Shown here in pieces: positions 1-52,335 of a DNA stretch of 64,000 nucleotides. A model generated the notes under the pieces. The model did no database searches, had not been told where the DNA came from, and saw only the letters and a program-made list of their open reading frames with translations. Position 1 is the stretch's first letter. The number at the start of each line of letters is the position of its first letter. Location: contig CATNEN010000035.1 in assembly GCA_950097015.1 (NCBI GenBank), positions 372,001-436,000 of the forward strand, given 5' to 3'. The DNA is from Macrostomum hystrix (Eukaryota > Animalia > Platyhelminthes). Made by a program: the position numbers and the translations under genes.

Positions 1-960
1 TCTGACCTGCCTACCCCTTCTCACCTGCCTACCCCATCTCACCTGCCTACCTCAACTCACCTGCCTACCCCATCTAACCTACCTACCTCAACTCACCTAC
101 CCACCCCATCTCACCTGCCTACCCCATCTCACCTGCCTACCCCATCTAACCTGCCTACCTCAACTCACCTACCCACCCCATCTCACCTGCCTACCTCAAC
201 TCACCCCATCTCCATCTGACCTGCCTACCCCTTCTCACCTGCCTACCCCATCTCACCTGCCTACCTCAACTCACCTGCCTACCCCATCTCACCTGCCTAC
301 CTCAACTCACCTACCCACCCCATCTCACCTGCCACCTCAACTCACCTGCCTACCCCATCTAATCTGCCTACCTCAACTCACCTACCCACCCCATCTCACC
401 TACCTACCCCATCTCACCTGCCTACCTCAACTCACCTGCCTACCCCATCTAATCTGCCTACCTCAACTCACCTACCCACCCCATCTCACCTACCTACCCC
501 ATCTCACCTGCCTACCTCAACTCACCTACCCACCCCATCTCACCTACCTACCCCATCTCACCTGCCTACCTCAACTCACCTGCCTACTCCATCTCACCTG
601 CCTACCCCATCTCACCTGCCTACCCTATCTAACCTGCCTACCTCAACTCACCTACCCACCCCATCTCACCTGCCTACCTCAACTCACCCCATCTCCATCT
701 GACCTGCCTACCCCTTCTCACCTGCCTACCCCATCTCACCTGCCTACCCCATCTCACCTGCCTACCTCAACTCACCTGCCTACCCCATCTCACCTGCCTA
801 CCTCAACTCACCTGCCTACTCCATCTCACCTGCCTACCCCATCTCACCTGCCTACCCCATCTCACCTGCCTACCCCATCCCACCTGCCTACCCCATCCCA
901 CCTGCCTACCTCAACTCACCTGCCTACCCCATCTCACCTGCCTACCCCATCTCACCCCAT
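1..960. repeat. C-rich minisatellite, ~18-nt units (cacctgcctaccccatct / cacctgcctacctcaact)
   Basis: Directly visible tandem units running off the 5' edge of the window. Confidence 0.95.
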
Positions 961-16709: not shown

Positions 16710-19700
16710 TCACCGCCGCCTCCTCCGCCTATAATCAATCGGATCGGTGATGACAGCGTTCTCGTCGAAGGCTTCGATGCACAGCACCACCTGGCTGGCA
16801 TCGCAGGTGATCTCGCGCGATTGGAACAGCTGGCCGCTGGCCAGGTCGGTGACGTAGCCCAGCTTCACCGGGTCCCGATTAGTGAAGCCTTCGCAGTCCT
16901 GACTGAACATGTTGGCCTCGCGCTGGACAGAACGAAGGCCCTGCCAGGCTAAAATCTCCGAGCTGCGAGCGAAATCGGTCAGGGTATCGGTCAGGGTATC
17001 GGTCAGGAAAATACGCAAGATGCGATCATGACACTAACGTGCCATAAAAAAATAACTGCAGGAGGGCTGCGGGCAATGGCACATCATTTGGTGGCACTAG
17101 ACCCACAGCCAGCGAATAGGCGATCCTGCCCATTCCGCTGACTCATGAGCACAATTGCACACAGGCACCGCACGCAGGCATACGCTCACACAGGTGTGTA
17201 CATCTTCCCTAACTTTCTCATCGTCTGGCAGTGTGCACTTTCACTGCGCCTAGGAGGTTTAACTTCAATGACATAAATTGCACGACAAGCCCCCCAAGCC
17301 TTCTCTTCGCATCTGCGCCCCAAATAAATGTGGCCTCGCCGCGGAATCGAGCTCAGGGACCTTGGTGCGAGAGGCAAACGCGTTAACCGCACTGCCACTC
17401 AACCCCCACTTACAGGCCATGGTGTTCTCGCCATTCAGTTAGGTTGCGACCGTTGAAGTCCTGCAGTTGGACGTCTGTGTTCCAGACGCCCCTGCTCAGC
17501 ATGTCAGAATAGCTGCTAAACAACTGCTGGCCCTGTCATGGATTGAGTGGCGCAGATGCTTGATCATTCTCAGCCATAGAGAATTATGAACCCTAGCAAC
17601 TAACGAACTCACATGAAAATTAACAATTGGTACGTTGGCTCGCTGCGAGGCGTGCACAATGGTGTCAAGATTGTTGAACTGGCCATTCAGAAACACTCTG
17701 AAATAGCTCCTGGCCAATCCAGCTGACACAGCAGCGTCTTGACACGCGTAATCTGCACCCAGGGTGCTGAAGGCGTTCTTGTAGTACAGATCACCGCGGA
17801 GCTTCACGGGCAGGGCGACGAGTCTCAGCTGAAATCGGAATTCCAGTTTTCAATAGCGACACAATGATGCGGTCCAGTTTTCAATACTAAACAACACAAT
17901 GATCCGGTCCAGTTTTCAATACTAAACAACACAATGATCCGGTCCAGTTTTCAATACTAAACAACACAATGATCCGGTCCAGTTTTCAATACTAAACAAC
18001 ACAATGATCCGGTCCAGTTTTCAATACTAAACAACACAATGATCCGGTCCAGTTTTCATTACTAAACAACACAATGATCCGGTCCAGTTTTCAATACTAA
18101 ACAACACAATGATCCGGTCCAATTTTTAATACTAAACAACACAATGATCCGGTCCAGTTTTCAATCCTATTAAAGCGTGTTGACACCACACTATTGATTT
18201 TTCAACCGTTGTTTACTATTTTGATATTTTATACTAATCAAATAAGTGAACACTGACCTTTTTGCCTGTGACGACATACGGCAGGAACAGCTCAGGCTTC
18301 ATCGACCGAGTTCTCGGGCTTTGAGTAGTTTGCTGTCGTGAAAGTCACGAGTTTCATTTGTTTAGAACAAATATATGTTTACTCTAAAGAATTATATTTG
18401 TTTTGCTTACTGGAAATCCAAGTCTAATCCGTGGTTTTACCTAAAGTGAAAATTATTTAACTGCTTTATTTGCTTGCCTTCTACTATTGAGTAGTCTATG
18501 AAAACAAGAAATAAAAACAGGCCACTCGCTAGAAACTTACTATATAGTTGGCAACTTCTATCCACTGATTCATTCTGTAGTCAACCTTAAGATAGAGGAC
18601 TTTATCATCCTTAGTGAACACCAGTGTGCCCTCCTCGAAGGCGTAGCTAATTTCTTCGAAACTTTTATAGGTAGTGATGACTCGCTGAAATCAGATTTGA
18701 AAGTAACTTCAATATGTACATCTGGCCAAGCAGGAGTGAGGTGGGGATAGAGGGCAGGAGCTGCTTTGCACATCTAGCCAAGCAGGAGTGAGGTGGGGGT
18801 AGAGGGCAGGAGCTGCTATGTACATCTAGCCAAGCAGGAGTGAGGTGGGGGTAGAGGGCAGGAGCTGCTATGTACATCTAGCCAAGCAGGAGTGAGGTGG
18901 GGGTAGAGGGCAGGAGCTTCTATGTACATCTGGCCAAGCAGGAGTGAGGTGGGGGGGGGCAGAGGGGAGGAGCTAAAAATGGACATGAGAAATAGACATG
19001 AGCTAAAAACTTGCACTGCAACAGTTCGATGGATGAGCGCATGAGTATTGGCCTCACCACAATCGTGGAAGATAAAGCTTGACCCCCGTTGGGTACTTTG
19101 CCACCTGTTGCTGGACCCGACGTTGATGAACTCTCGCCTTCACTGGTGCTGCCACTGCCACCTCCGCGGCAGGCGCCGCAGGATGCACCAGGCTCCCCTT
19201 TCTCTCCCTTCAATCCGTTGGGCCTCTGCCCCGCTAGCTGCAGCTGCTCGCGAACCAACTGGCGCACAATGGACGCAGTGCTTCCCGGCTCTCCTTTCTG
19301 GCCAGGCTCGCCTTTGACTCCGGTCGAAGTGGGACTGCACTGCTCCGGTTTGCACTGTCCCGGAGAGCCTTGGTGCCCGATTTCACCCTTAAGAGAGGAT
19401 CAAGTAGATTGCATTATAAATTAATTTGTCTCAGCCTAACGCGATTTGTGACATTACGGAAATTACATTTTCTAAACGTCATCTTCAAAATCGAACCTTT
19501 TTTCCTGGCGGTCCTTGGGGTCCCTGTTGTCCGGGTGGTCCCTAAAGTATTATAGAAGTAACAAATGATAAGAAATGATAAGAAATAGTATATTCGCGAT
19601 CATAATTTCTAGAAGTCGCCAATGAGCGGTCGACATATTAAACTTCACAGTACAGCGTTGTAGGTGTCACAATGAAGCGTTGTAGGTGTCACAATGAAGC

Positions 19701-26274: not shown

Positions 26275-28574
26275 CTACCACGGAGCACACGGGTCAGGAC
26301 AGGTCTGCCTGTACGTGTGGTACTCCCCTGTGTCCACTCGCATCAAGGCCGTGTAGGTGGTGAGCTTGTTGAGCACAGGGATGGAGCTGAGCACGTTGAA
26401 GATCTCCTTAAAGCTGATGGCGGCCTGGCCCTTGGCCATCATGCACTTGTCGCCAGGAGTGCGCCTGTCGTCTAGCACGAACGGCGGCTTCCAGTGATCG
26501 TAGTTGGTCTGCAGCAGGAACCAGGTGTGGTTCACGGCCGCTGAGCGCTCCCAAACGTCGATGGCGGCGGCTCGGGACCGAGTGATGATGCAGCCCTGCA
26601 GGTGAGAAAAAAACAAATCAATAATATAGTAATATTTGAGTAGTCAAAGGAAATGAGCTCTTTTATCCGTCGGTTGAGTCAACAGAACAACGACATCGAC
26701 GAATTCATAAAATTAATATCTCTGTCAGAGGACGGAAGAATATCGAGGAATAATAAATAATTGATTACACCTGCCCCAATCGGGTCAGATGTGCAGCCGA
26801 CAGCACAGCCGCAGCTATTGCGCGGCGCATCTGAAGGCTGCGTACGGCTGTTCAGTCCATGGACTGGGGGGACGCCACACCCACCTTCAATTATCCCAGC
26901 TGATGCTGGTACCCATTTAACAGCTGGGTGAACTGAAGCAATGCATAGTTAAGTGTCTTGCTAAAGGGCACAAATTTTTCCAGTGGAGTCGGGAATCGAA
27001 CCCCCGACCTTCAAGTCGTGAGTCCTACGCCCTAACCACTAGGCTACAACAGGAATATAAATCCCTAAAATCGGTCGGGGACTGTTACCATCGGGAGACT
27101 GGTGTCATTGTCATTTGTCAGGCACAGGTCTCTGTTGCAAGGGTACATGTGTCACTATCATAATGTGTACGCATACTTATAAGTGTCAATATCTTGTGGA
27201 TAGGCCTCTCAACCAGATCACGGATGTCACCACCAAGGTAAACAGTCTCACCTGCATGCTGCTGTTGCCGCCCAGAATGAAGTAGGCAGGCGCGAGCATC
27301 TTGGCTCCGGTGAGCATCTGCTTGGCCTGGTCGTAGCTGTCCGCAGTCTCCATCACGCTGCGCGTCAGGAAGCCCATCCAGACAGCGTCCCGCTTGCCCA
27401 GGATCCACTCGATGATGCCGATGTAGCCACCGTCGGCGTTGAAGCGCTCGTTCATTGTGAGACTGAACCGGCCGGGCTTCAGGGCAGTCAGGATGCCAAC
27501 GTAGCCGGCAAAGTTGGTGGACATGAACAGCGGGCGGCCGGCCTTCAGGTAGCGGATGTTCACAATGGCCGGCCGGAGGTACTCAGTGATAAGCCAGGTG
27601 TTGTTAACCAGATCCCAGCCGAGAAACAGGCCGAAGTCCAGGTTGCGTGCGTGGTAGAGGACGCCCTTTCAGTCGCAAGGAATTTTAGGGTCACCTAAAT
27701 AGTTCTGAACTTACAGATGCTGATTATAATTAGTAGGGAGGTCAAGCTAAGGATATCATGCCCCTACTGAACGACCCAGGGGGTGAGTGGCTGAGCGGTT
27801 AAGGCGTTTGCCTCCCTGAGCTCGATTCCACGACGAGGCCACATTCATTTGGGGCGCAGCCGCGGAGAAAAGGCTTGGGGGCTTGTCGTGCAATTTACGC
27901 CTTAGAGAGCCAACCTCCAAGGCACAATGAGAGTGTGCACTGACAGTCAGAAAGTCAGGGCAGGTGTACACAAGTGTGCTGAGGAGTCAGCAAAATGGGC
28001 AGACTTGCCTCCTCGCTGGCTGCGGGTCTAGAGGCACCGAATGATGTGCCATTACCCACAGCCTTCCTGCAATTTTTTATGGATTTTTGTGCGGTAGGTC
28101 ACATTACGTAACTAAAGTCTGCCAGTTTCTCACCTTTGAATCCTCGGCCACAATGGAAGTGCACACGGTGAAGATCTCGTAGAAGATGTTGTACAGCGTG
28201 ACCTCTCCCAGCGGTATTCCGGTCATGTTGGCGATGCCGACTAGCTCATCGCGGTAGGGCTGGGGCAGGGTAAGCGCCAGTGGTGTCAGATCCTTGTCCA
28301 CCAGGTTGATCAGCAAGTCGGAGCCGGTCATGTTGCGCACAAAGATCTTGAACTGGGCTATCAGGGCGCGCAGCTGGGGTCCGCGGTTGGCTACCACAGT
28401 GCGCCAGCGGGTCAGCGGCGCTTCGTCTAGGTTGACGTCAACCCAGTCGACCTCGCTGCTGGCAGGCGGCGGGTAGGCATCCGAACGACACTGTGTGGGA
28501 ATCTGGGCTCGAGCTGCGAAAGCCAGCAACAGCAGCAGCAGCAGCGGACAAAGCAAACGGCTTTGCCAAGTCAT
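26275..28574 (-). CDS. ASAH1: Acid ceramidase, copy A (3 exons, ~391 aa)
   Basis: Exons 28574-28134, 27665-27252 and 26595-26275. It has a signal peptide, IFYEIFTV-C-TSIVAED (catalytic Cys at the beta-subunit start), HARNLDFG, APAYFILGG, QTNYDHWK, DDRRTP, VLNKLTTYT and the C-terminus CPDPCAPW. Confidence 0.95.
26752..27050 (-). mobile_element. SINE family 1, full-length copy in ceramidase A intron 2
   Basis: It is a near-identical reverse complement of 51128-51435, with a tRNA-like head carrying A and B boxes. Confidence 0.92.
27776..28075 (+). mobile_element. SINE family 2 copy with an internal deletion, in ceramidase A intron 1
   Basis: ggtgagtggctgagcggttaaggcgtttgcc head, the shared body, and a gcaatttttt tail. 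Confidence 0.85.
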
Positions 28575-29197
28575 TGTGACGACAATTGAGTTTCACCCAA
28601 AAATAACTTTTAATTTTTATCGAAAGTAACACGCTGGTGTGGCCAAGTGGGGCAACTTTTATCTAACAAAATGAAGCACTGGTTGGCAATTGCTTTTTTC
28701 TGCCTTTCGTCTCTTCTGCGCTTTGTAGATAAGCTTGGCCTTGCTGCCAGATTATTCGAATTTTCTTGTTCAGAATTCAGATGACGCACAGGTGAAACGA
28801 TAAGACTATAAACAAGCCCAGCCAGCACCATCACACACACACACACACACAGATCGCTTACCTACTGATATGAAATCTGTGAACAAGCCTCTGCAATAGC
28901 GAATTCCATTTTGTCAGCAACACTTTCTAAAAAACGAATGGTTCAGCTAATAGATGTACTCTTGCTCTGAGCCACTCTCTGATGCAGGCCAGGCCCAGTG
29001 TTCGCACCTAGGCTCTGTAGCGCGACTGTGACAGCGAAATTGAAGCACTTATGACGACATCTTGCCTTCCTAGCCTTTGAAACAGGGGAATCACTGAAGC
29101 GCACGCACTGTTGATGCACTACAGCGTAGTTGTCCTCTAAAAGTACTGAGGGTTAACGACTGTCTTTCAAAAGTACAGCGTTGGAGTTATCGTGACC

Positions 29198-29722
29198 TTC
29201 AAAAGTACAACAATGTAAGATAACGGGGGTCCTTCAAAAGTACAACATGGAGTTATCGATTCTCCTTGAAAAGTACAACATGGAGTTATCGATTCTCCTT
29301 GAAAAGTACAACATGGAGTTATCGATTCTCCTTGAAAAGTACAACATGGAGTTATCGATTCTCCTTGAAAAGTACAACATGGAGTTATCGATTCTCCTTG
29401 AAAAGTACAACATGGAGTTATCGATTCTCCTTGAAAAGTACAACATGGAGTTATCGATTCTCCTTGAAAAGTAAAACATGGAGTTATCGATTCTCCTTGA
29501 AAAGTACAACATGGAGTTATCGATTCTCCTTGAAAAGTACAACATGGAGTTATCGATTCTCCTTGAAAAGTACAACATGGAGTTATCGATTGTCCTTGAA
29601 AAGTACAACATGGAGTTATCGATTCTTCTTGAAAAGTACAACATGGAGTTATCGATTCTTCTTGAAAAGTACAACATGGAGTTATCGATTCTCCTTGAAA
29701 AGTAAAACATGGAGTTATAGAT
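29198..29722. repeat. 33-nt minisatellite (gaaaagtacaacatggagttatcgattctcctt), ~15 copies
   Basis: Visible units; degenerate units continue leftwards to ~29140. Confidence 0.97.
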
Positions 29723-30697
29723 TTTCCTTTAACAGTTAAGCGTAGGAATCTTTTGAAGTAAAAGTACAGGGTTGAAGGTTATTTTTTAATATACCGAGCA
29801 AAGACGGAACAATGTTGACAACGATCCACTAAATTGAGGTAAACTAATAAAACAAAGAAAGATAAATGCAGGATAAATCGAGTTTATGAGCAATAGTCAG
29901 TGAGAGCTCATATTTTGAGCCTTTAATTTTGTCCGACTTTGTATTTAATATTTCAACTGCACTTTCGTTTACAACAAAAGACAATAGCTTTCTTGGTCAA
30001 AAACTTATAGTAACTCAAGTTACGAGTATTAGTGAGGAAGCGGGTAAATAAGTGGTTTAAAGAAATACGCGACAAAAATGAATAGCACAATGCAGATATA
30101 GCCAAGATGATGTTCTTGTCTGGCAGGCAGGTAATTTGTTGGAAAGGAAAAGTAAACTAGCAAATAACTAAAAACTGACATGCAAAATAGTGCTTTAGTT
30201 AAACGGACAATAAAGAACTATAAAACTGAACTGTGTTTGCAAGAGAAAGCTCAGGCAATATTCTAAGCAAAGCACGATAGAGAATACTACTCAAAAGGCG
30301 GGACTAATATCAGTAGTAAGTTGCAAAAACTGTTTAGATAAATAAAAATTTTTAAGTTGGGCCGGTTGAGCTGAGGAGCAAATGCCGTCATGCAGGAAGG
30401 CGGGAAAATAAAAAAAGCACAGCACACGCGCAGCACACTACTTGAAATATTCATTTATAAGTAGTGATTTAGATAAGCCAAACCAAATTTCAGACTAGAT
30501 AAAATCATCAATCAAGTTTTACAGACGCATGCAAAATAAACATAATAATCATTTGAAAGCTGCTCTAGCAGTCTGACAAAGTTTCTGCAGAGCGTTGTGA
30601 CGTAATAATAATGTGCCTTACTTTAGCGGGCGAAATCGCTGACTCAGGTTGAAAAAGTGCTCAAAGTCCACCAAGAGTGACACCGGAAGCTCATCGA

Positions 30698-33600
30698 TCA
30701 CTTGTCACCAGAGGCGCCAGCAGCCTTCAGGCGTTCCTTGATGCAGTCTTCCGCCACCTCGCTGAGATCATTAGCCTGAATCTCTACCACACCGCGCAGC
30801 TTGTGCTTGATGGCGTCCTGGGAGAGTTCAGGTGCGGATTGAAACATTTGGTGGACTGGGATTGAAGGGATAAATATTGGTGGACTGGGATTTGAGGGAT
30901 AAATATTTGGTGGACTGGGATTGAAGGGATAAATATTGGGTGGACTGGGATTGAAGGGATAAATATTGGTGGACTGGGATTGAAGGGATAAATATTGGTG
31001 GACTGGGATTGAAGGGATAAATATTTTGTGGACTGGGATTGAAGGGATAAATATTTGGTGGACTGGGATTGAAGGGATAAATATTTGGTGGACTGGGATT
31101 GAAGGAATAAATATTGGTGGACTGGGATTGAAGGGATAAATATTGGTGGACTGGGATTGAAGGGATAAATATTGGTGGACTGGGATTGAAGGGATAAATA
31201 TTTGGTGGACTGGGATTGAAGGGATAAATATTGGTGGACTGGGATTGAAGGGATAAATATTGGTGGACTGGGATTGAAGGGATAAATATTGGTGGACTGG
31301 GATTGAAGGGATAAATATTGGTGGACTGGGATTGAAGGGATAAATATTTTGTGGACTGGGATTGAAGGGATAAATATAGGTGGACTGGGATTTGAGTGAT
31401 GTGTATTTAGTGAAATGGGATTTAAGGGGTGTGTATTTAGTGAAATGGGATTTGAGGGGTGTGTATTTGGTAAAATGGGATTTGAGGGGTGTGTATTTGG
31501 TGAAATGGGATTTGAGGGGTGTGTATTTAGTGAAATGGGATTTGAGGGATGTGTATTTGGTGAAATGGGATTTGAGGGGTGTGTATTTGGTGAAATGGGA
31601 TTTGAGGGATGTGTATTTGGTGAAATGGGATTTCAAGGATGTGTATTTGGTGAAATGGGATTCGAGGGATGTGTATTTGGTGAAATGGGATTTGAGAGGT
31701 GTGTATTTAGTGAAATGGGATTTGAGGGATGTGTATTTGGTGAAATGGGATTTGAAGGATGTGTATTTCGTGAAATGGGATTTGAGGGGTGTGTATTTGT
31801 TGAAATGGGATTTGAGGGATGTGTATTTGGTGAAATGGGATTTCAAGGATGTGTATTTGGTGAAATGGGATTTGAGGGGTGTGTATTTGGTGAAATGGGA
31901 TTTGAGGGGTGTGTATTTGGTGAAATGGGATTTGAGGGGTGTGTATTTAGTGAAATGGGATTTGAGGGATGTGTATTTGGTGAAATGGGATTTGAGGGGT
32001 GTGTATTTGGTGAAATGGGATTTGAGGGGTGTGCATTTAGTGAAATGGGATTTGAGGGATGTGTATTTGGTGAAATGGGATTTGAGGGGTGTGTATTTGG
32101 TGAAATGGGATTTGAGGGATGTGTATTTGGTGAAATGGGATTTCAAGGATGTGTATTTGGTGAGATGGGATTCGAGGGATGTGTATTTGGTGAAATGGGA
32201 TTTGAGAGGTGTGTATTTAGTGAAATGGGATTTGAGGGGTGTGTATTTAGTGAAATGGGATTTGAGGGGTGTGTATTTAGTGAAATGGGATTTAAGGGAT
32301 GTGTATTTGGTGAAATGGGATTTGAGGGTGTGTATTTGGTGAAATGGGATTTGAGTGATGTGTATTTAGTGAAATGGGATTTGAGGGGTGTGTATTTAGG
32401 GAAATGGGATTTAAGGGGTGTGTATTTAGTGAAATGGGATTTGAGGGATGTGTATTTAGTGAAATGGGATTTAAGGGGTGTGTATTTGGTGAAATGGGAT
32501 TTGAGGGTGTGTATTTAGTGAAATGGGATTTGAGGGATGTGTATTTCGTGAAATGGGATTTGAGGGGTGTGTATTTAGTGAAATGGGATTTAAGGGATGT
32601 GTATTTCGTGAAATGGGATTTGAGGGTGTGAGGGTGTGTATTTGGTAAAATGGGATTTGAGGGGTGTGTATTTGGTGAAATGGGATTTGAGGGGTGTATT
32701 TAGTGAAATGGGATTTGAGGGATGTGTATTTGGTGAAATGGGATTTGAGGGGTGTGTATTTAGGGAAATGGGATTTGAGGGTGTGTATTTGGTAAAATGG
32801 GATTTGAGGGGTGTGTATTTGGTGAAATGGGATTTGAGGGGTGTGTATTTAGTGAAATGGGATTTGAGGGATGTGTATTTGGTCAAATGGGATTTGAGGG
32901 TGTGTATTTGGTGAAATGGGATTTGAGGGGTGTGTATTTAGTGAAATAGGATTTGAGGGGTGTGTATTTGGTGAAATGGGATTTGAGGGATGTGTATTTG
33001 GTGAAATGGGATTTAAGGGATGTGCATTTGGTGAAATGGGATTCGAGGGATGTGTATTTGGTGAAATGGGATTTGAGAGGTGTGTATTTAGTGAAATGGG
33101 ATTTGAGGGGTGTGTATTTAGTGAAATGGGATTTGAGGGGTGTGTATTTAGGGAAATGGGATTTGAGGGGTGTGTATTTAGTGAAATGGGATTTAAGGGA
33201 TGTATTTGGTGAAATGGGATTTGATGGTGTGTATTTGGTGAAATGGGATTTGAGGGGTGTGTATTTAGTGAAATGGGATTTGAGGGGTGTGTATTTAGTG
33301 AAATGGGATTTAAGGGATGTGTATTTGGTGAAATGGGATTTGAGGGATGTGTATTTAGTGAAATGGGATTTGAGGGGTGTGTATTTAGTGAAATGGGATT
33401 TGAGGGGTGTGTATTTGGTGAAATGGGATTTGAGGGATGTGTATTTAGTGAAATGGGATTTGAGGGGTGTGTATTTAGTGAAATGGGATTTGAGGGATGT
33501 GTATTTGGTGAAATGGGATTTGAAGGATGTGTATTTGGTGAAATGGGATTCGAGGGATGTGTATTTGGTGAAATGGGATTTGAGAGGTGTGTATTTAGTG

Positions 33601-34159
33601 AAATGGGATTTGAGGGGTGTATTTGGTGAAATGGGATTTGAGGGGTGTGTATTTGGTGAAATGTGATTTGAGGATTTAAGATGAAATTAAATAGGATATG
33701 GGGTGTATTTTACATTCTAAAACAAAGCAAGAAAAAAACTAAGTTCTGTTACTCGTAGATTGAGTTCCTGTGATTGTGAATTTCATGAGACGAGACGGGT
33801 TAGTCTCATAAGGAGATAGGATCTGGAATCACCAAGAGAAACGACAAACGCACCTTAGACGAAGCGTAGATCATCTTGCAGCGAATCTTGCACACATCCG
33901 GGGCCCAGTGAATGAACAGCAGCTTCTCTCGCTTGCCGCCATCCTCCAGGGTGTAGGCGTAGTCGTAGATTATGTACCGACAGTCGTTCCTCGGCAGGGA
34001 CTCCACGAAGTCCTCATAGGTGCTCTCCTCCACAATGCGCTCCGTGGTGATAGTGGAGTCGTTGACAATGTGAAACACAATGTAACGATACCTGTGACCG
34101 ATTTTGATGGCCTTGAAATGCTCCTCAACCTGCGGATCTACGGTGACGCCTGAGGCCAT
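30698..34159 (-). CDS. CFL: Cofilin / actin-depolymerising factor (2 exons, 141 aa)
   Basis: Exon 34159-33854 reads MASGVTV..RYRYIVF..YEDFVESLPRNDCRYIIYDY..KLLFIHWAPDVCKIRCKMIYASSK. Exon 30817-30698 reads DAIKHKLRGVVEIQANDLSEV.. The junction is a phase-0 GT-AG join. Confidence 0.95.
30849..31388. repeat. 28-29-nt minisatellite (ggtggactgggattgaagggataaatatt) in the cofilin intron
   Basis: Visible units. Confidence 0.97.
31380..33665. repeat. 30-nt minisatellite (gtgaaatgggatttgaggggtgtgtatttg), ~2.3 kb, in the cofilin intron
   Basis: Visible units; they explain the ORFs 30698-33666. Confidence 0.98.
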
Positions 34160-34364
34160 TGGTAGGACTTGTGGGCGAGTGGTGCGATTTCAGATGCGGA
34201 AGAAATTGCTTCGACTCCTTGGTCTGTGTGAGATTGCTGCAGTTGTGCGCATTGGAGTTTCTAGACAGATCAATTATTCCTCATATGCCTTCTACCCCTC
34301 CCACATGTTATCTACCCTCATCATTTCTGTTTTCCACATTGATTCCCAATCTATCTTCTATCCC

Positions 34365-35265
34365 CATGCCAAATCTACCGTGTACCCCACCCCCAAATCT
34401 ACCATGCACCCCACCCAAATCTACCATGCACCCCACCCAAATCTACCATGCACCCCACCCAAATCTACCATGCACCCCATGCCAAATCTACCGTGTACCC
34501 CACCCCCAAATCTACCATGCACCCCACCCAAATCTACCATGCACCCCACCCAAATCTACCATGCACCCCACCCAAATCTACCATGCACCCCACCCAAATC
34601 TACCATGCACCCCATGCCAAATCTACCGTGTACCCCACCCCCAAATCTACCATGCACCCCACCCAAATCTACCATGCACCCCACCCAAATCTACCATGCA
34701 CCCCATGCCAAATCTACCGTGTACCCCACCCCCAAATCTACCATGCACCCCACCCAAATCCACCATGCACCCCACCCAAATCTACCATGCACCCCACCCA
34801 AATCTACCATGCACCCCACCCAAATCTACCATGTACCCCACCCAAATCTACCATGCACCCCACCCAAATCTACCATGTACCCCACCCAAATCTACCATGT
34901 ACCCCACCCCCAAATCTACCATGTACCCCACCCCTAATCTACCATGTACCCCACCCCTAATCTACCATGCAGCCCACGCCTAATCTACCATGTACCCCAC
35001 CCCCAAATCTACCATGTACCCCACCCCTAATCTACCATGTACCCCACCCCCAAATCTACCATGCAGCCCACGCCTAATCTACCATGTACCCCACCCCTAA
35101 TCTACCATGTACCCCACCCCCAAATCTACCATGTACCCCACCCCTAATCTACCATGTACCCCACCCCCAAATCTACCATGCAGCCCACGCCTAATCTACC
35201 ATGTACCCCACCCCAAATCTACCATGTACCCCACCCCCAAATCTACCATGTACCCCACCCCTAAT
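34365..35265. repeat. 22-24-nt C-rich minisatellite (ccaaatctaccatgcaccccac)
   Basis: Visible units. Confidence 0.96.
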
Positions 35266-35654
35266 CTTGTAGAAAAGACCAATTGTTTAGTCTATCAAAA
35301 TAACTAGAAAAAGAAGACAAAAGTTAGCACGGCTCCCAGCGTTAAAATAACACCAGAATGCGGAAAGTAAGAAAATGCCACAAGTTTATAAAAAGTACAT
35401 AAGCTATAAATAGAAACGTAGCAACAGTTAACTGACTGCATTGCTAAACAACAGTCTAGTAGTGCTAGACTCATAACAACAGCGCAGTTATCGGTAAGCC
35501 GAAAAAGGATTAGAACAAAAACGTACGAGTAATAGGTCGGGATTTTTCGTCCACTTTTTTGTATCGTCAAAGAAAACCTACTTATTTGACAGCGTGATAG
35601 TGAGAAACGCGATGATCAGGAAAAGGATGGGAAACGGAGTGGCGAGGGAAGATG

Positions 35655-36115
35655 CATGAAGCTGATAGGGTGGGGAAGGAGGGTGGGGAGGGAATATGCA
35701 TGAAGCTGATAGGGTGGGGAAGGAGGGTGGGGAAGGAGGGTGGGGAATGAGGGTGGGGAAGGAGGGTGGGGAATGAGGGTGGGGAAGGAGGGTGGGGAGG
35801 GAATATGCATGAAGCTGATAGGGTGGGGACGGAGGGTGGGGAGGGAATATGCATGAAGCTGATAGGGTGGGGAAGGAGGGTGGGGAAGGAGGGTGGGGAA
35901 TGAGGGTGGGGAAGGAGGGTGGGGAATGAGGGTGGGGAAGGAGGGTGGGGAAGGAGGGTGGGGAATGAGGGTGGGGAATGAGGGTGGGGAAGGAGGGTGG
36001 GGTATGAGGGTGGGGAAGGAGGGTGGGGAAGGAGGGTGGGGAAGGAGGGTGGGGAGGGAATATGCTTGAAGCTGATTGGGTGGGGAAGGAGGGTGGGGAG
36101 GGAATGTACCTGAAG
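35655..36115. repeat. G-rich 14-nt minisatellite (gggtggggaaggag), G-quadruplex-prone
   Basis: Visible units. Confidence 0.93.
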
Positions 36116-36244
36116 CTGATAGTTGAAGACAGGGACAAATAGGGATGAGAAGCGTGACTCGGAGGGTGAAGTGAAATGATAAAGTGCAATGCATTTCATT
36201 GATATCGCGCACCTAAGCATGATGCAGGCTTAAATCTGAAATAC

Positions 36245-38042
36245 TCAAGCGGGCCGTTTCTCTCCGCCCGTCTTAGCGAAGCCGGCATAATTGCCAGTGG
36301 TGAGCAGCCGATTGAGTCGATCAACTTCCTCCAGCGTGTTGGCGCGTCGAATAGCCTCACGAACAGCCAGAAGGTCGGCGGATGTCGGACCGCCGCTGGC
36401 GGCCGGAGTAGCGGCGGCGGCCGCCGGAGTCGGCGCAGCGGCGGCGGCCGGCACCGGAGCACCCGGCGTGAAGGTCATGGGCTTGGCGGGCTTCAACGGA
36501 TTACTGGCGGACTTGTCGGCGCCGGAGGCGAGCACCGCCGCGGCCTGCTTTCGCTCGGAGTCTGTGACTCGGCGAAAGTCCAAGTAGCGCAGATTTGGCA
36601 GCTTGTGTATCACGTGCAGGCGATAGTTGCGCCGACTGCACACCGGATTCTTCAGCAGCGAGAGAAAGCGCAGCTGTTTCAAAGCAGCCAGAGGTTCGAG
36701 ATCTGCCAGCTCCTGCAGGCAATTGTTAGTTAGCAGCAGGGTGGATATGCGGGGCAGGCTAGTTGGCAGGCCGTCACCGATGCGCATCACCTTGTTATTG
36801 TTCATCACCAGGCTGGTTAGGCGGGGCAGGTGGGGAAATCCGTCCAGCTTGCGCACCTTCAATCATGAAAAATGGAGATCTGTGCATTTTATACGAAACA
36901 GTTCAAAACTAAATAAGCATTGACGTAATATCAAAACACTACATTAAAAATCCCACAGGGCTATTCAAAGCAAAGCACAAGGGCAAATTCCACGGATTCT
37001 ATTTATAGAAAAGCGCTAATCTAAAGAATAGCGCGAGTGGGAATTCCACAAGTGCTATCTCGTATAAAACGGAACGGTCACGAAATGGGGCTGTGACCGT
37101 TTAGTCTGTGACCGTGAAACGTAACGCTGTGACTGTTTTGTGTGACCGTTCATATTATTGAAACTTAGGTCACCAGGTAACCGTTCACTGTGACCGTTCT
37201 GTGTGACCATTCTGTGACTGTTTAATGTGACCGTTCTGTGTGACCATTCTGTGACTGTTTACTGTGACCGTTCTGTGTGACCATTCTGTGACTGTTTACT
37301 GTGACCGTTCTTTGACTGTTATGTGACCTTTCTGCGACCGTTCTGTGACTGATCAGTCACATAGTGACCTTGATGAAGGGTCACAAAAAATGGACCATAA
37401 CAGTCACATTGACAGTCACAATCCCTTTTTTGTGACCGTTCCGTTTTATACGGGTATTTATAGAACAGCGCAAGCGAAATTCTAAACATGCTATTTTATA
37501 TAATAGCTCTAGGGGAATTCCACAGATGCTATTTATAGAACATCGCAAGGGAAATTCTAAACATGCTATTTTATATAATAGCTCTAGGGGAATTCCACAG
37601 ATGCTATTTATAGAACATCGCAAGGGAAATTCTAAACATGCTATTTTATATAATAGCTCTAGGGGAATTCCACAGATGCTATTTATAGAACAGCGCAAGG
37701 GAAATTCTAAACATGCTATTTTATATAATAGCTCTAGGGGAATTCCACAGATGCTATTTATAGAACAGCGCAAGGGAAATTCTAAACATGCTATTTTATA
37801 TATTAGCTCTAGGGGAATTCCACAGATGCTATTTATAGAATGTCGCGATGGAAAACTTTTTAAGTAGGATGAAAAATCTTCCTCACCTCATTATCAGTCA
37901 GATCAATAGTATCAAATTGATCCAATGTGGCACTTAAATTTTCCAACAGAGCTACTTTGTAGCCGCGCAGATCTAGCTCCCTATCTCCTAGAGGGTTTGT
38001 TGTCTGCACGGAGCTCTGAATCAATTCAGGAGTAAGCTTCAT
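36245..38042 (-). CDS. SNRPA1: U2 snRNP protein A' (2 exons, 255 aa)
   Basis: Exon 38042-37887 reads MKLTPELIQ..NPLGDRELDLRGYKV..ENL.ATLDQFDTIDLTDNE. Exon 36856-36245 reads VRKLDGFPHLPRL.SL.MNNN..LTNN.LQEL.DL.PL..LSLLKNPV..YRL.VIHKLP.LR.LDF..V..ER, with the C-terminal AI..A.TLEEV.RL motif. Confidence 0.96.
37059..37454. mobile_element. 396-bp MITE with ~25-bp TIRs, subterminal ctgtgaccgtt repeats and a 3-bp TSD (TAT); CMC/CACTA-like
   Basis: The left end CTCGTATAAAACGGAACGGTCACGAA matches the reverse complement of the right end, CCCGTATAAAACGGAACGGTCACAAA. TAT lies at 37056-58 and 37455-57. The superfamily is inferred. Confidence 0.88.
37455..37843. repeat. 75-nt minisatellite, ~5 copies, in the SNRPA1 intron
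   Basis: Unit tttatagaacagcgcaagggaaattctaaacatgctattttatataatagctctaggggaattccacagatgcta. Confidence 0.96.
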
Positions 38043-38604
38043 TTTCTCTGAAGAATTTTTGGTGATTTTGTTACTGTCAAAGTGCGGATGAAAATAAGGG
38101 CTGAAATTGTTCAAGATTATTATGAAAGTGCATAATAAGGAGTTTAGCGTCGAGTAAATCGGCTCAATAGGCAATTATGTAATAAATGACTAAAACGTAA
38201 CTATATTTTCGATATGGTCCAAAACTTATTATACTTCACGGCATAATGACAATGTAAATAGATTTAAATAGTGGAATATAATCAGATTAAATAAGTTAGA
38301 AAAAAATAGCGAAAATCTTAAATACAGCACCCGAAGTCACATTATTTGTTCTGTAGTGTTAAAAAGTATCTGATAAAAAACAGCACAAAGTAAAAAAATG
38401 GGGTAGATAATAAAAGTCAGCAATGATTTTGTTAATAAAACAAGACTTCTAAATAGTAATAAACGTAGAGATTTTTATAGTTTTGTGTAAAATAATGTGC
38501 TATCAAAATAGTTGTGTATAGATTTGTCTGAGAGCATAGGCACTGACCAAAAAATACATTCCATATAAACAGTTGCATAGAATATTGTGTTAAAATTTTG
38601 TATT

Positions 38605-41600
38605 CTACCACAGAGGACACGGGTCAGGACAGGTCTGCCTGTACGTGCGGTACTCCCCTGTGTCCACTCGAATCAAGGCCGTGTAGGTGGTGAGCTTGTT
38701 GAGCACAGGGATGGAGCTGAGCACGTTGAAGATCTCCTTAAAGCTGATGGCGGCCTGGCCCTTGGCCATCATGCACTTGTCGCCAGGAGTGCGCCTGTCG
38801 TCTAGCACGAAAGGCGGCTTCCAGTGATCGTAGTTGGTCTGCAGCAGGAACCAGGTGTGGTTCACGGCCGCTGAGCGCTCCCAAACGTCGATGGCGGCGG
38901 CCCGGGACCGAGTGATGATGCAGCCCTGCAGGTGAGAATAATTGTTTGCAAAATGTTGTTTCTGAGTTACAGGTATGTCTTAAGATGATTGGTAACTACC
39001 AGGTGACAAGTATATATTTATAAGGGGACAGTGGACAGGGATATGATTATGTATTTATGTGGCAGGTATCTTTGATGTGACAGGTATGCATTAATTGAGG
39101 TGACAGCTGACAGGGATATATTTAAGAGATGACAGCTGACAGGTATCAATATATGAGGTGACAGGTATTAATATATCAGGTGATGTATCAATATATCAGG
39201 TGACGTATCAATATATGAGGTAACAGGTATCAATATATGAGGTGACAGGTATCAATACATGAGGTGACAGGTATTAATATATCAGGTGACGTATCAATAT
39301 ATCAGGTGACGTATCAATATATGAGGTAACAGGTATCAATATATGAGGTGACAGGTATCAATACATGAGGTGACAGGTATTAATATATCAGGTGACGTAT
39401 CAATATATCAGGTGACGTATCAATATATGAGGTAACAGGTATCAATATTTGAGGTGACAGGTATCAATATATGAGGTGACAGGTATCAATATATGAGTTG
39501 ACAGGTATTAATATATCAGGTGACGTATCAATATATCAGGTGAAGTTTCAATATATGAGGTAACAGGTATCAATATATGAGGTAACAGGTATCAATATAT
39601 GAGGTGACAGGTATCAATATATGAAGTGACAGGTATCGATATATGAGGTGACAGGTATCAATATATGAGGTGACAGGTATCAATATATGAGGTGACAGGT
39701 ATCAATATATGAAGTGACAGGTATCAATATATGAGGTGACAGGTATCAATATATGAGGTGACAGGTATCAATATATGAGGTGACAGCTATCAATATATGA
39801 GGTGACAGCTATCAATATATTTGGTGACATGTATCAATATATGAGGTGACAGGTATCAATATATGAGGTGACAGGTATCAATATATGAAGTGACAGGTAT
39901 CAATATATGAGGTGACAGGTATCAATATATGAGGTGACAGGTATCAATATATGAGGTGACAGCTATCAATATATGAGGTGACAGCTATCAATATATTTGG
40001 TGACATGTATCAATATATGAGGTGACAGGTATCAATATTGAGGGGACAGTTATCAATATTGAGGTGACAGGTATCTATATATGAGCTGACATGTGTGTAT
40101 CAGGCGAAAGGTGTCTATTAGGCAAGATCTCTATACAAGTCTCACCTGCATGCTGCTGTTGCCGCCCAGAATGAAGTAGGCAGGCGCGAGCATCTTGGCT
40201 CCGGTGAGCATGTGCTTGGCCTGGTCGTAGCTGTCCGCAGTCTCCATCACGCTGCGCGTCAGGAAGCCCATCCAGACAGCGTCCCGCTTGCCCAGGATCC
40301 ACTCGATGATGCTAAAGAAGCCGCCTTTAGTATTGAAGCGCGTATTGATTGACAGGCTGAATCGACCGGGCTTTAGCGCTGTCAGAACGCCGACATATCC
40401 GGCAAAGTTGGTGGACAAGAACAGCGGTCTACCGGCCTTCATAAAGCGGATATTGACAATGGTGGGTCTCAAGTATTCGGTGATAAGCCAGGTGTTTTTG
40501 GCCTTGTCCCAGCCGAGAAACAGGCCGAAGTCCAGGTTGCGCGCGTGGTAGAGAACGCCCTGGTTTGAGTCAAAAGTGTGGGTGGGTAAGGAATAGGGAC
40601 TAGAGCTACTCTATGAATGACAGTCACATAAAAACCAGTATTCACACTAAATGACAGTCACAACATTACCAAAATCACACTCAATGAGTCACAACATTAC
40701 CAAAATCACACTCAATGAGTCACAACATTACCAAAATCACACTCAATGAGTCACAACATTACCAAAATCACACTCAATGACAGTCACAACATTACCAAAA
40801 TCACATTCAATGACAGTCACAACATTACCAAAATCACATTCAATGACAGTCACAACATTACCAAAATCACACTCAATGAGTCACAGCATTACCAAAATCA
40901 CACTCAATGACAGTCACAACATTACCAAAATCACACTCAATGACAGTCACAACATTACCAAAATCACACTCAATGAGTCACAACATTACCAAAATCACAC
41001 TCAATGGTAGTCACAACATTACCAAAATCACACTCAATGAGTCACAACATTACCAAACTCACACTCAATGAGTCACAACATTACCAAAATCACACTCAAT
41101 GAGTCACAACATTACCAAAATCACACTCAATGGTAGTCACAACATTACCAAAATCACACTCAATGACAGTCACAGTATGACTTCTCTCACCTCAGAGTCT
41201 TCAGCTACAATCGAAGTGCACAATGTGAACATGTCATAGAAGATGTTGTAGAGCATTATCTCGCCCAATGGGATGCCGGTGAAGTCAGCAATGCCTCTTA
41301 TCTCATCTCGATATGGCTGTGGCAGCGAATAGATAAGCGGTGACAGTTCATAATCTACCATATGAATAATGACACTGGAGCCAGTCGTTTTGTGTAGGAA
41401 TCGTTTAAACTGAACAATCAAAGCTCGCAATTGGTGAGCTCGGTGGGTTACTACGCTGCGCCATCGAATCCAAGCTGGCTCGTCCAAGTTAACGTCAAAC
41501 CACTCAACCTCAGAGCTGGCTTTAGGAGGGTAGGCATCAGAGCGGCACTGGGCAGGTGACAACTGGGCGCAGCCAATTATAGATGCTATCAGAAGCAGAA

Positions 41601-41634
41601 GGCTCATTGGTAGCAGGCATGTTCGACAATTCAT
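38605..41634 (-). CDS. ASAH1: Acid ceramidase, copy B (3 exons, ~392 aa)
   Basis: Exons 41634-41191, 40559-40146 and 38925-38605 have the same intron positions as copy A. It retains a signal peptide, TLCTSIVAED, HARNLDFG and CPDPCPLW. Confidence 0.94.
39130..40085. repeat. 22-nt minisatellite (gacaggtatcaatatatgaggt) in ceramidase B intron 2
   Basis: Visible units. Confidence 0.96.
40651..41173. repeat. 31-33-nt minisatellite (cacaacattaccaaaatcacactcaatgagt) in ceramidase B intron 1
   Basis: Visible units. Confidence 0.96.
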
Positions 41635-51127: not shown

Positions 51128-51435
51128 GGTTGTAGCCTAGTGGTTAGGGCGTCGGACTCACGACTTGAAGGTCGGGGGTTCGATTCCCGACTCCACTGGA
51201 AAAATTTGCGTCCTTTAGCAAGACACTTAACTCTGCATTGCTTCAGTTCACCCAGCTGTTAAATGGGTACCAGCATCAGCTGGGATAATTGAAGGTGGGT
51301 GTGGCGTCCCCCCAGTCCGTGGACTGAACAGCTGTACGCAGCCTTCAGATGCGCCGCGCATTAGCTGCGGCTGTGCTGCCGGCTGCACATCTGACCCAAT
51401 TGGGGCAGGTGTAATCAATTATTTATTATTATTAT
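51128..51435 (+). mobile_element. SINE family 1, full-length copy (tRNA head, Meta/V-SINE-like central domain, AT-rich tail)
   Basis: The head is gttgtagcctagtggttagggc (A box)...ggttcgattcccga (B box). The core is gcaagacacttaac..tgcttcagttcacccagctgttaaatgggtacc and the tail is aatcaattatttattattat. Confidence 0.92.
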
Positions 51436-51982: not shown

Positions 51983-52335
51983 GGGGTCGGTGGCAGAGCG
52001 GTTATCGCGTTTGCCTCTCGCACCAAGGTCCCTAAGTTCGATTCCACGGCGAGGCCACATTTATTTGGGGCGCAGCCGCGGAGAGAAGGCTTGGGGGCTT
52101 GTCGTGCAATTTACGCCCTTGAGGGCCAACCTCCAAGGCACAGTGAAATGTACACTGCCCGACGATGAGAAAGTCAGGGCCGATGTACACACTTGTTTGA
52201 GCGCATGCCTGAGTACAGTATCTGTGTGCGTGTGTGCTCAGGAGTCAGCGAAATGGACAGAATTGCCTCCTCGCTGGCTGCGGGTCTAGTGTCACGAAAT
52301 GATGTGCCATTGTCCTCAGCCCTCCTGCAATTATT
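51983..52335 (+). mobile_element. SINE family 2, full-length copy
   Basis: ggtggcagagcggttatcgcg..aagttcgattccacgg head, the shared body, and a gcaattattat tail. Confidence 0.9.

What the first reader, a model, noticed from the sequence alone, without database searches (positions are those of the whole stretch)
26275..41634. Two acid ceramidase paralogues are near-identical only inside exon tracts: exon-restricted (possibly cDNA-templated) gene conversion
Seen in the sequence: exon 3 differs at only 6 of 321 nt by my count. The 3' 167 nt of exon 2 (27252-27418 vs 40146-40312) differ at 1 nt. Identity then collapses abruptly in mid-exon 2 (gatgatgc|cg vs gatgatgc|ta), although a ~50-nt patch at the start of exon 2, covering the HARNLDFG catalytic motif, is again almost identical. 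Exon 1 is strongly diverged. The intron between the two homogenised tracts is unrelated beyond 8 and 13 nt of splice signal, and identity stops exactly at the stop codon. The homogenised tracts are GC-rich like copy A, while the rest of copy B is AT-richer. Inference: an old duplicate whose catalytic beta-subunit is being overwritten A-to-B, either by reverse-transcribed mRNA or by DNA tracts limited by intron non-homology, while the N-terminal alpha-subunit diverges. That would give a chimeric enzyme with a new N-terminus on a conserved core.
Basis: partly seen in the sequence, partly recalled or inferred. Interest (0 to 1): 0.78.

Follow-up and report, generated by a model that had tools for sequence, protein, structure and literature searches.

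The report
Exon-limited gene conversion between ceramidase paralogues
Two old duplicate acid ceramidase genes in a Macrostomum flatworm keep overwriting the 3' half of each other's coding sequence by gene conversion, and the sister species M. lignano does the same; this is a clean example of concerted evolution, a process already well known.

Summary
Exon 3 differs at 6 of 321 nt. The last 167 nt of exon 2 differ at 1 nt. The rest of the genes is 55-85% identical, and introns and flanks cannot be aligned.

The window comes from a Macrostomum flatworm close to M. lignano. M. lignano has the orthologous pair in the same gene order (B-type, U2A'-like LRR gene, cofilin, A-type). The same block there (residues 232-388) is also homogenised.

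Inside the block, paralogues within a species have dS 0-0.12, while orthologues between species have dS 0.63-0.95. A tree that groups the genes by type is rejected there (AU p about 1e-76). Synonymous sites are therefore free to change. The block is kept alike by recurrent interlocus gene conversion in both lineages, not by selection.

Both species share the same 5' limit. It lies at a 13-codon loop that has diverged strongly in the B-type genes.

The cDNA idea is not supported. The intron is retained, and in the window 13-16 intron bases next to exon 3 were homogenised too.

The net direction A to B is plausible. All five differences inside the tract are derived in B, and the tract has A-like GC3.

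The scan's earlier notes report gene conversion in two other paralogue families of this genome. Verdict: a new member of a known kind.

The parts
28134..28574 (-). Copy A exon 1: signal peptide, alpha-subunit and the CTSIVAED nucleophile motif
   Evidence: Translation and splice sites. Pfam NAAA-beta, E 1.4e-9. About 90% aa identity to M. lignano PAA81828.1.
27252..27665 (-). Copy A exon 2 (CBAH domain, HARNLDFG motif)
   Evidence: Pfam CBAH, E 5e-14. Splice sites.
26275..26595 (-). Copy A exon 3, including the stop codon
   Evidence: Pfam CBAH.
41191..41634 (-). Copy B exon 1: fast-evolving, AT-richer N-terminal part that keeps the CTSIVAED motif
   Evidence: GC3 0.52. dN 0.35 to the M. lignano B-orthologue, against 0.057 for the A pair.
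40146..40559 (-). Copy B exon 2
   Evidence: Aligns to human ASAH1 beta-subunit residues 153-288, E 6e-53.
38605..38925 (-). Copy B exon 3, including the stop codon
27252..27418 (-). Homogenised tract, exon 2 part, copy A. Its partner in B is 40146-40312.
   Evidence: 1 difference in 167 nt. dS 0.
26287..26608 (-). Homogenised tract, exon 3 part plus 13 intron bases, copy A. Its partner in B is 38617-38938.
   Evidence: 4 differences in the exon part. The intron acceptor flank is identical for 13 contiguous bases, against at most 4 in 27 other acceptor pairs. The tract ends before the last three codons, which keep type-specific states.
40146..40312 (-). Homogenised tract, exon 2 part, copy B
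38617..38938 (-). Homogenised tract, exon 3 part plus 13 intron bases, copy B
40313..40349 (-). B-type divergent loop (aa 218-230 in copy A numbering; partner in A is 27419-27455). It forms the 5' limit of the tract and includes the residue aligned to human Glu225.
   Evidence: 14 nt differences in 37 nt. The same limit, within about 5 nt, is seen in M. lignano. T in B and S in the M. lignano B-type align to E225.
36290..38042 (-). U2A'-like LRR gene lying between B and A
   Evidence: tblastn with the middle of the M. lignano fused model P0156. Pfam LRR_9 on the M. lignano gene.
30701..34144 (-). Cofilin/ADF gene lying between B and A
   Evidence: tblastn at 90-95% identity. Pfam Cofilin_ADF on the M. 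lignano gene.

Best explanation
A and B are ancient paralogues of acid ceramidase (ASAH1 family). They lie about 10 kb apart in direct orientation, with two unrelated genes between them. The duplication predates the split between this Macrostomum species and M. lignano.

Since then, the 3' part of the coding sequence (residues 232-388, about 470 nt across the end of exon 2 and nearly all of exon 3) has been repeatedly homogenised within each genome. The process is non-reciprocal interlocus gene conversion that copies genomic DNA.

Tracts are confined to exon sequence because only there is enough homology left. Introns and flanks have diverged beyond alignment and carry different SINE and satellite insertions.

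The 5' limit is a 13-codon loop that has diverged strongly in the B-type genes. It acts as a homology barrier, possibly reinforced by selection.

The net flow in the window species is most likely A to B. The result is a B enzyme whose catalytic core is kept A-like while its alpha-subunit and the first half of its beta-subunit evolve several times faster.

Shown: the mosaic, its presence in two species, the free change of synonymous sites between species, and the age of the duplication. Inferred: the DNA template, the direction, and the cause of the limit.
For: - Counts: exact base counts in the window.
- Orthology of B: the gene order B, LRR gene, cofilin, A is the same on two M. lignano contigs. 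B shares derived states with the M. lignano type 2 gene (WDKAK, PTIVNIRF, the C-terminal P-L/I-W, and nucleotide states in the loop). The protein tree of the N-terminal part groups them (SH-aLRT 92, UFBoot 69).
- Age: paralogue dS in exon 1 is saturated (above 1.26), against 0.71 for the A orthologues.
- Exchange, not selection: in the tract, dS is 0-0.03 for winA/winB and 0.03-0.12 for the M. lignano paralogues, but 0.63-0.95 between orthologues. The tract tree groups by species with 100% bootstrap, and the by-type topology is rejected at AU p about 1e-76. Permutation gives p <= 5e-5 in both species.
- Ongoing in M. lignano: polymorphisms shared between paralogues, and a second tract at residues 181-217.
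- DNA template: introns are unalignable between paralogues, yet the window's intron 2 acceptor flank is identical for 13 contiguous bases (15 of 16), against at most 4 in 27 other acceptor pairs.
- Direction: all five differences inside the tract are derived in B, and the tract has A-like GC3.
Against: - The window assembly itself is unverified.
- On nucleotides, the by-species topology for the 5' part is not formally rejected (AU p 0.079). Orthology of B therefore rests on synteny, shared derived states and a moderately supported protein tree.
- Identity runs right up to both exon edges of intron 2 without the decay expected near a homology border. A spliced template would explain that more simply.
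- In M. lignano, identity ends within 0-5 nt of those exon edges.
- GC-biased conversion could mimic the compositional argument for direction.
Confidence: 0.8

Rival explanations
1. Spliced mRNA or cDNA of copy A served as the donor. Only exon sequence was transferred, in one tract spanning the exon 2-exon 3 junction.
For: - Homogenisation covers exon sequence on both sides of intron 2 right up to the splice sites, while the introns are unrelated.
- Decay of identity is seen only at the two outer ends of the combined tract.
- The same inference (dS far below intron divergence) has been published for fungal ribosomal protein paralogues (PMC6993855).
Against: - A cDNA tract crossing a junction is expected to delete the intron, as in the classical model of cDNA-mediated intron loss (my knowledge). 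Intron 2 is retained in both species.
- In the window, 13-16 intron bases at the acceptor are homogenised although orthologues share nothing there.
- The 3' UTR is not homogenised.
- M. lignano has a separate short tract upstream of the divergent loop, which fits many short DNA tracts.
- Non-homology of the introns explains exon restriction without any RNA.
Confidence: 0.07
2. Assembly or polishing artefact. Reads of A were used to correct B, or the copies were partly collapsed, so the true B is diverged throughout.
For: No read-level check was possible. Near-identical short tracts inside diverged paralogues are where polishing errors occur (my knowledge).
Against: - The same mosaic, with the same 5' limit, is present in an independent assembly of another species, on two separate contigs.
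- The B tract is not a perfect copy. It carries five private substitutions.
- The borders fall at the divergent loop and at type-specific terminal codons, as in M. lignano.
- There are no Ns in the window.
Confidence: 0.04
3. The block is conserved by purifying selection that also acts on synonymous sites (an overlapping element, or extreme codon bias), without any exchange.
For: The block encodes the most conserved part of the enzyme (N320 and R333 equivalents) and has the highest GC3.
Against: Orthologues differ at 40-55% of synonymous sites inside the block (dS 0.63-0.95), as much as elsewhere in the gene. Species-specific substitutions are shared by both paralogues in each species. The by-type tree is rejected.
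Confidence: 0.01

Closest known systems
Concerted evolution of duplicated ribosomal protein genes in fungi (Mol Biol Evol 2019, PMC6993855)
   Same: Old paralogues whose coding sequence is homogenised while introns and flanks are diverged. The process occurs in parallel in several lineages. The exon restriction raised the cDNA-donor hypothesis.
   Different: Here only part of the CDS is homogenised, and a conserved limit lies inside an exon. The genes are neighbours 10-12 kb apart. A few intron bases were co-converted, which argues for a DNA donor. Nothing indicates very high expression.
Long-lasting concerted evolution of mammalian gene pairs (BMC Evol Biol 2009, PMC2720389; abstract only)
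   Same: Paralogues are more alike than orthologues over stretches of the gene since before a species split. This is attributed to ongoing gene conversion.
   Different: A different phylum and gene family. I did not read beyond the abstract, so the detailed comparison is untested.
Mosaic divergence of tandem paralogues under interlocus gene conversion (HMA4 model, bioRxiv 10.1101/2025.10.29.685298; abstract only)
   Same: Neighbouring paralogues show a mosaic of homogenised and diverged segments.
   Different: That work models young duplicates under selection for dosage. Here the duplicate is old, and one copy evolves fast in its N-terminal half.
Primate L/M opsin and RH gene pairs (my knowledge, not checked here)
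   Same: Conversion homogenises most exons, while a few functionally distinct sites or segments stay different, plausibly protected by selection.
   Different: In those pairs the introns are also homogenised, often more than the exons. Here the introns are unrelated.

Membership tests
Interlocus gene conversion / concerted evolution of paralogues | Within the tract, paralogues in one genome are more alike than orthologues between species | tested here: met
   Paralogues are 97-100% identical against 80-92% for orthologues. The tract tree groups by species, bootstrap 100.
Interlocus gene conversion / concerted evolution of paralogues | Synonymous sites are homogenised within a genome but free to change between species | tested here: met
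   dS is 0-0.12 between paralogues and 0.63-0.95 between orthologues in the tract.
Interlocus gene conversion / concerted evolution of paralogues | Significantly discordant histories of adjacent segments | tested here: met
   The by-type topology is rejected in the tract (AU p about 1e-76) and is the best topology in the 5' part, though the by-species tree is not rejected there (p 0.079). Fragment permutation gives p <= 5e-5.
Interlocus gene conversion / concerted evolution of paralogues | The duplication is older than the homogenised similarity suggests, and gene order is kept (no unequal crossover) | tested here: met
   The order B, LRR gene, cofilin, A is conserved on two M. lignano contigs. 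Exon 1 dS is saturated.
Interlocus gene conversion / concerted evolution of paralogues | Both copies are confirmed in raw reads of the same individual | not testable with these tools
cDNA- or mRNA-templated gene conversion | Only exon sequence is transferred; no donor intron bases are in the tract | tested here: not met
   13 contiguous (15 of 16) intron bases at the exon 3 acceptor are shared by A and B. All 27 other acceptor pairs, orthologues included, share at most 4.
cDNA- or mRNA-templated gene conversion | A tract that crosses an exon junction removes the intron | tested here: not met
   Intron 2 is present in A (656 nt) and B (1220 nt), and in all four M. lignano genes.
cDNA- or mRNA-templated gene conversion | The donor is highly expressed in the germ line | not tested
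   No RNA reads were available.
Acid ceramidase (ASAH1) / NAAA family of Ntn-hydrolases | NAAA-beta and CBAH domains above Pfam's thresholds | tested here: met
   Searched exon by exon, for both copies. Best solved relatives are ASAH1 structures 5U81, 6MHM and 5U7Z, E about 1e-53 for exon 2.
Acid ceramidase (ASAH1) / NAAA family of Ntn-hydrolases | Catalytic Cys143 at the autocleavage site, plus equivalents of Arg159, Asp162, Asn320 and Arg333 | tested here: met
   CTSIVAED, HARNLDFG, QTNYDHW and DDRRTP are present in both copies. Residue roles are from PMC5915598.
Acid ceramidase (ASAH1) / NAAA family of Ntn-hydrolases | Glu225 equivalent (its backbone N contributes to the oxyanion hole) | tested here: inconclusive
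   A has E. B has T, and the M. lignano B-type has S. Because the backbone atom is the one used (PMC5915598), the change need not abolish activity.
Acid ceramidase (ASAH1) / NAAA family of Ntn-hydrolases | Ceramide-hydrolysing activity | not testable with these tools
   Needs an enzyme assay.

The most novel reading that the evidence does not exclude
At least part of the homogenisation is templated by spliced RNA or cDNA of the A gene, acting on both sides of a retained intron. For example, a heteroduplex could form with the intron looped out and then be restored. That would be an animal case of RNA-guided paralogue correction without intron loss, recurring in two species.
Probability: 0.07. 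Interest if true: 0.65.

Novelty: new member of a known kind. Interest (0 to 1): 0.35.

Why it matters
It is a well-resolved, two-species example of partial concerted evolution. One half of an enzyme gene is kept nearly identical to its paralogue for longer than the species have existed, while the other half diverges six times faster at the protein level.

Three practical points follow:
- Trees or dating based on the 3' half of these genes will wrongly suggest recent, species-specific duplications in Macrostomum.
- The shared limit at the loop carrying the oxyanion-hole residue gives a concrete place to ask whether B has a new substrate preference.
- Together with the scan's earlier notes of conversion in two other paralogue families of this genome, it suggests that interlocus conversion is common in Macrostomum genomes.

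It does not reveal a new mechanism.

Tried and rejected
- **Reads check.** The assembly check and the test for B expression were therefore not done.
- **First protein search.** An exon-wise word search with B exon 2 found nothing closer than 60% identity, because of the length filter. An alignment of separate exon pieces with two partial homologues as scaffold then reached the M. lignano proteins.
- **Joined proteins.** The joined (spliced) proteins of A and B were never sent to any search tool. They were used only in local scripts.
- **HARNLDFG patch.** Rejected as a separate conversion tract, because A is equally similar to its orthologues there.
- **Unequal crossover.** Rejected, because the two genes between the copies are kept in both species.
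- **Independent duplications in each species.** Rejected on synteny and saturated exon 1 dS.
- **B-type sequences from further species.** The two other relatives found (Logan transcripts L002-L004 and L008) are A-type only.
- **ARAGORN.** It found no tRNA gene in the SINE-like insertion.
- **Large representative search, structure prediction and fold search.** Not used, because the family was never in doubt.

Full report
**What is there**

The window holds two intact three-exon genes on the minus strand.
- Copy A: exons 28134-28574, 27252-27665 and 26275-26595.
- Copy B: exons 41191-41634, 40146-40559 and 38605-38925.
- All splice sites are GT-AG, both introns are in phase 0, and both reading frames are open.

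Searched exon by exon, both copies match Pfam NAAA-beta and CBAH. Exon 2 aligns to human acid ceramidase structures at E about 1e-53. Both copies keep the Cys nucleophile (CTSIVAED) and the equivalents of Arg159, Asp162, Asn320 and Arg333. The roles of those residues are taken from PMC5915598.

**The observation**

| Stretch | Differences |
|---|---|
| Exon 3 | 6 of 321 |
| Last 167 nt of exon 2 | 1 of 167 |
| Other 247 nt of exon 2 | 52 of 247 |
| 30 nt after the stop codon | 25 of 30 |

Identity in intron 2 runs 8 nt past the donor and 13 nt before the acceptor. Beyond that, introns, upstream flanks and downstream flanks cannot be aligned even with 7-nt words. A permutation of polymorphic sites gives p <= 5e-5 for the fragment.

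Two details need correction.
- The near-identical patch over HARNLDFG is equally conserved between A and its orthologues, so it needs no exchange.
- The tract stops before the last three codons. There B keeps states that it shares with the M. lignano B-type gene.

**Where the window comes from, and the sister species**

A profile made from the separate exon pieces found M. lignano proteins as the best relatives. Copy A is about 90% identical to PAA81828.1.

M. lignano has two gene types. Type 1 is A-like, and type 2 shares derived residues with B.

On two M. lignano contigs the gene order is type 2, an LRR_9 (U2A'-like) gene, a cofilin gene, type 1. tblastn finds the same two intervening genes between B and A in the window.

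Paralogue dS in exon 1 is saturated, against 0.71 for the A orthologues. A protein tree of the N-terminal part joins B with type 2 (SH-aLRT 92, UFBoot 69). The duplication is therefore older than the species split, and B is the orthologue of type 2.

One caveat applies. On nucleotides, the by-species tree for the 5' part is worse but not formally rejected (AU p 0.079).

**The decisive comparison**

The block covers residues 232-388.

| Comparison within the block | dS |
|---|---|
| Window paralogues (A vs B) | 0-0.03 |
| M. lignano paralogues | 0.03-0.12 |
| Orthologues between species | 0.63-0.95 |

- The orthologue values are as high as elsewhere in the gene.
- Each species has its own substitutions, shared by both of its paralogues.
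- The tract tree groups genes by species with 100% bootstrap, and the by-type topology is rejected at AU p about 1e-76.

In M. lignano the process looks ongoing. The two contigs carry variants shared across paralogues. The type 1 genes of the two contigs differ at 7 sites in the tract and at none in the rest of the CDS. There is also a second homogenised tract at residues 181-217.

**The limits**

In both species the 5' limit falls within about 5 nt of the same place. That place is the downstream edge of a 13-codon loop (A 27419-27455, B 40313-40349). The loop is highly conserved in A-type genes and in distant relatives, but strongly diverged in both B-type genes. In M. lignano it also holds a 3-nt indel.

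The loop includes the residue aligned to human Glu225. It is T in B and S in the M. lignano type 2 gene. In human ASAH1 the backbone nitrogen of Glu225 contributes to the oxyanion hole (PMC5915598).

M. lignano has converted tracts on both sides of this loop but not across it. The loop is therefore a homology barrier, an island protected by selection, or both. Its sequence is not conserved between the two B-type genes, which favours the barrier reading.

**DNA or cDNA donor**

Restriction of conversion to exons has been used to argue for cDNA donors in fungal ribosomal protein genes (PMC6993855). Here the evidence points the other way.
1. A tract copied from spliced cDNA across the exon 2-exon 3 junction should remove the intron. 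This expectation comes from my own knowledge of the classical model of cDNA-mediated intron loss. All six genes keep intron 2.
2. In the window, the last 13 intron bases (15 of 16) before exon 3 are identical in A and B. All 27 other pairs of acceptor flanks, orthologous pairs included, share at most 4. These intron bases were therefore co-converted, which needs a genomic template or an unspliced one.
3. The 3' UTR is not homogenised.
4. The extra short tract in M. lignano fits many short DNA tracts.
5. I did not test it.

One point remains in favour of a spliced template. Identity reaches both exon edges of intron 2 without decay, and in M. lignano it ends within 0-5 nt of them. I give that reading about 7%.

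**Direction**

All five differences inside the tract are derived in B, and three of them change the protein; A has none. Tract GC3 is 0.87, like A-type genes everywhere, while B's unconverted exon 1 has 0.52. Net flow from A to B is the simplest reading, although GC-biased conversion could add to the compositional signal. In M. lignano, the tract at residues 181-217 may have gone the other way: the type 1 gene there departs from the A-type consensus.

**State of copy B**

B is not decaying. Both B-type genes are intact after a divergence of dS about 0.7-0.9. In exon 1, the raw proportion of non-synonymous differences is about 0.36 of the synonymous proportion, and that ratio is an overestimate because dS is saturated. 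B's N-terminal part nevertheless changes about six times faster than A's (dN 0.35 against 0.057).

**What could not be done**

The window assembly and B's expression are unverified. The artefact reading is made unlikely only by the independent M. lignano assembly and by B's private substitutions.
- The joined spliced proteins were not sent to any search tool.
- No B-type sequence from a third species was found.

**Verdict**

It is a clean new example of a familiar process, of moderate interest.

Noticed in passing
window 26749-27050 (A intron 2) and 51129-51430: A roughly 300-nt SINE-like element with a tRNA-like end sits in intron 2 of copy A. It is 97% identical, in inverted orientation, to a copy at 51129-51430, so the insertion is recent. 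ARAGORN calls no tRNA gene there.
   Followed up: partly
window 27813-28080 (A intron 1); copies near 52029-52332, 13013-13334, 17049-17359, 2296-2511: A second interspersed repeat family, 81-88% identical between copies, occupies much of intron 1 of copy A.
   Followed up: no
window 39137-40091 and 40642-41174: Both introns of copy B consist mostly of minisatellites. One array has a 22-nt unit with about 44 copies. The other has a 31/64-nt unit with about 16 copies. More arrays fill the spacer between B and A (29230-29736, 30846-33673, 34362-35267, 35639-36120, 37455-37840).
   Followed up: no
window 27247-27256 with 26597-26606 (A); 40141-40150 with 38927-38936 (B): The last 5 nt of exon 2 plus the first 5 nt of intron 2 (TGCAG|GTGAG) are the exact reverse complement of the 10 intron nt that lie just before the last intron base (CTCACCTGCA). 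The two ends of intron 2 could therefore pair. This is seen in both window copies but not in M. lignano. It may be chance among splice-signal-like sequences.
   Followed up: no
L005/L001 (NIVC01000511.1) and L006/L007 (NIVC01000512.1), M. lignano: M. lignano has an extra homogenised tract at residues 181-217 (dS 0.04-0.08). It lies upstream of the divergent loop and is absent from the window species. Variants in the main tract are shared across paralogues between the two contigs.
   Followed up: partly
P0156, P0157 and P0158 (UniRef models of M. lignano): Public gene models fuse the type 2 ceramidase, the U2A'-like gene, the cofilin gene and the type 1 ceramidase into single 'ceramidase' proteins of 920-1173 aa. 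This is an annotation artefact of same-strand neighbours.
   Followed up: partly
window 40313-40349 (B) and M. lignano type 2 genes: B-type genes replace the residue aligned to human Glu225 (T or S instead of E) and rewrite the surrounding NERFNADGGYIG loop. That loop is otherwise conserved from flatworms to fish.
   Followed up: partly
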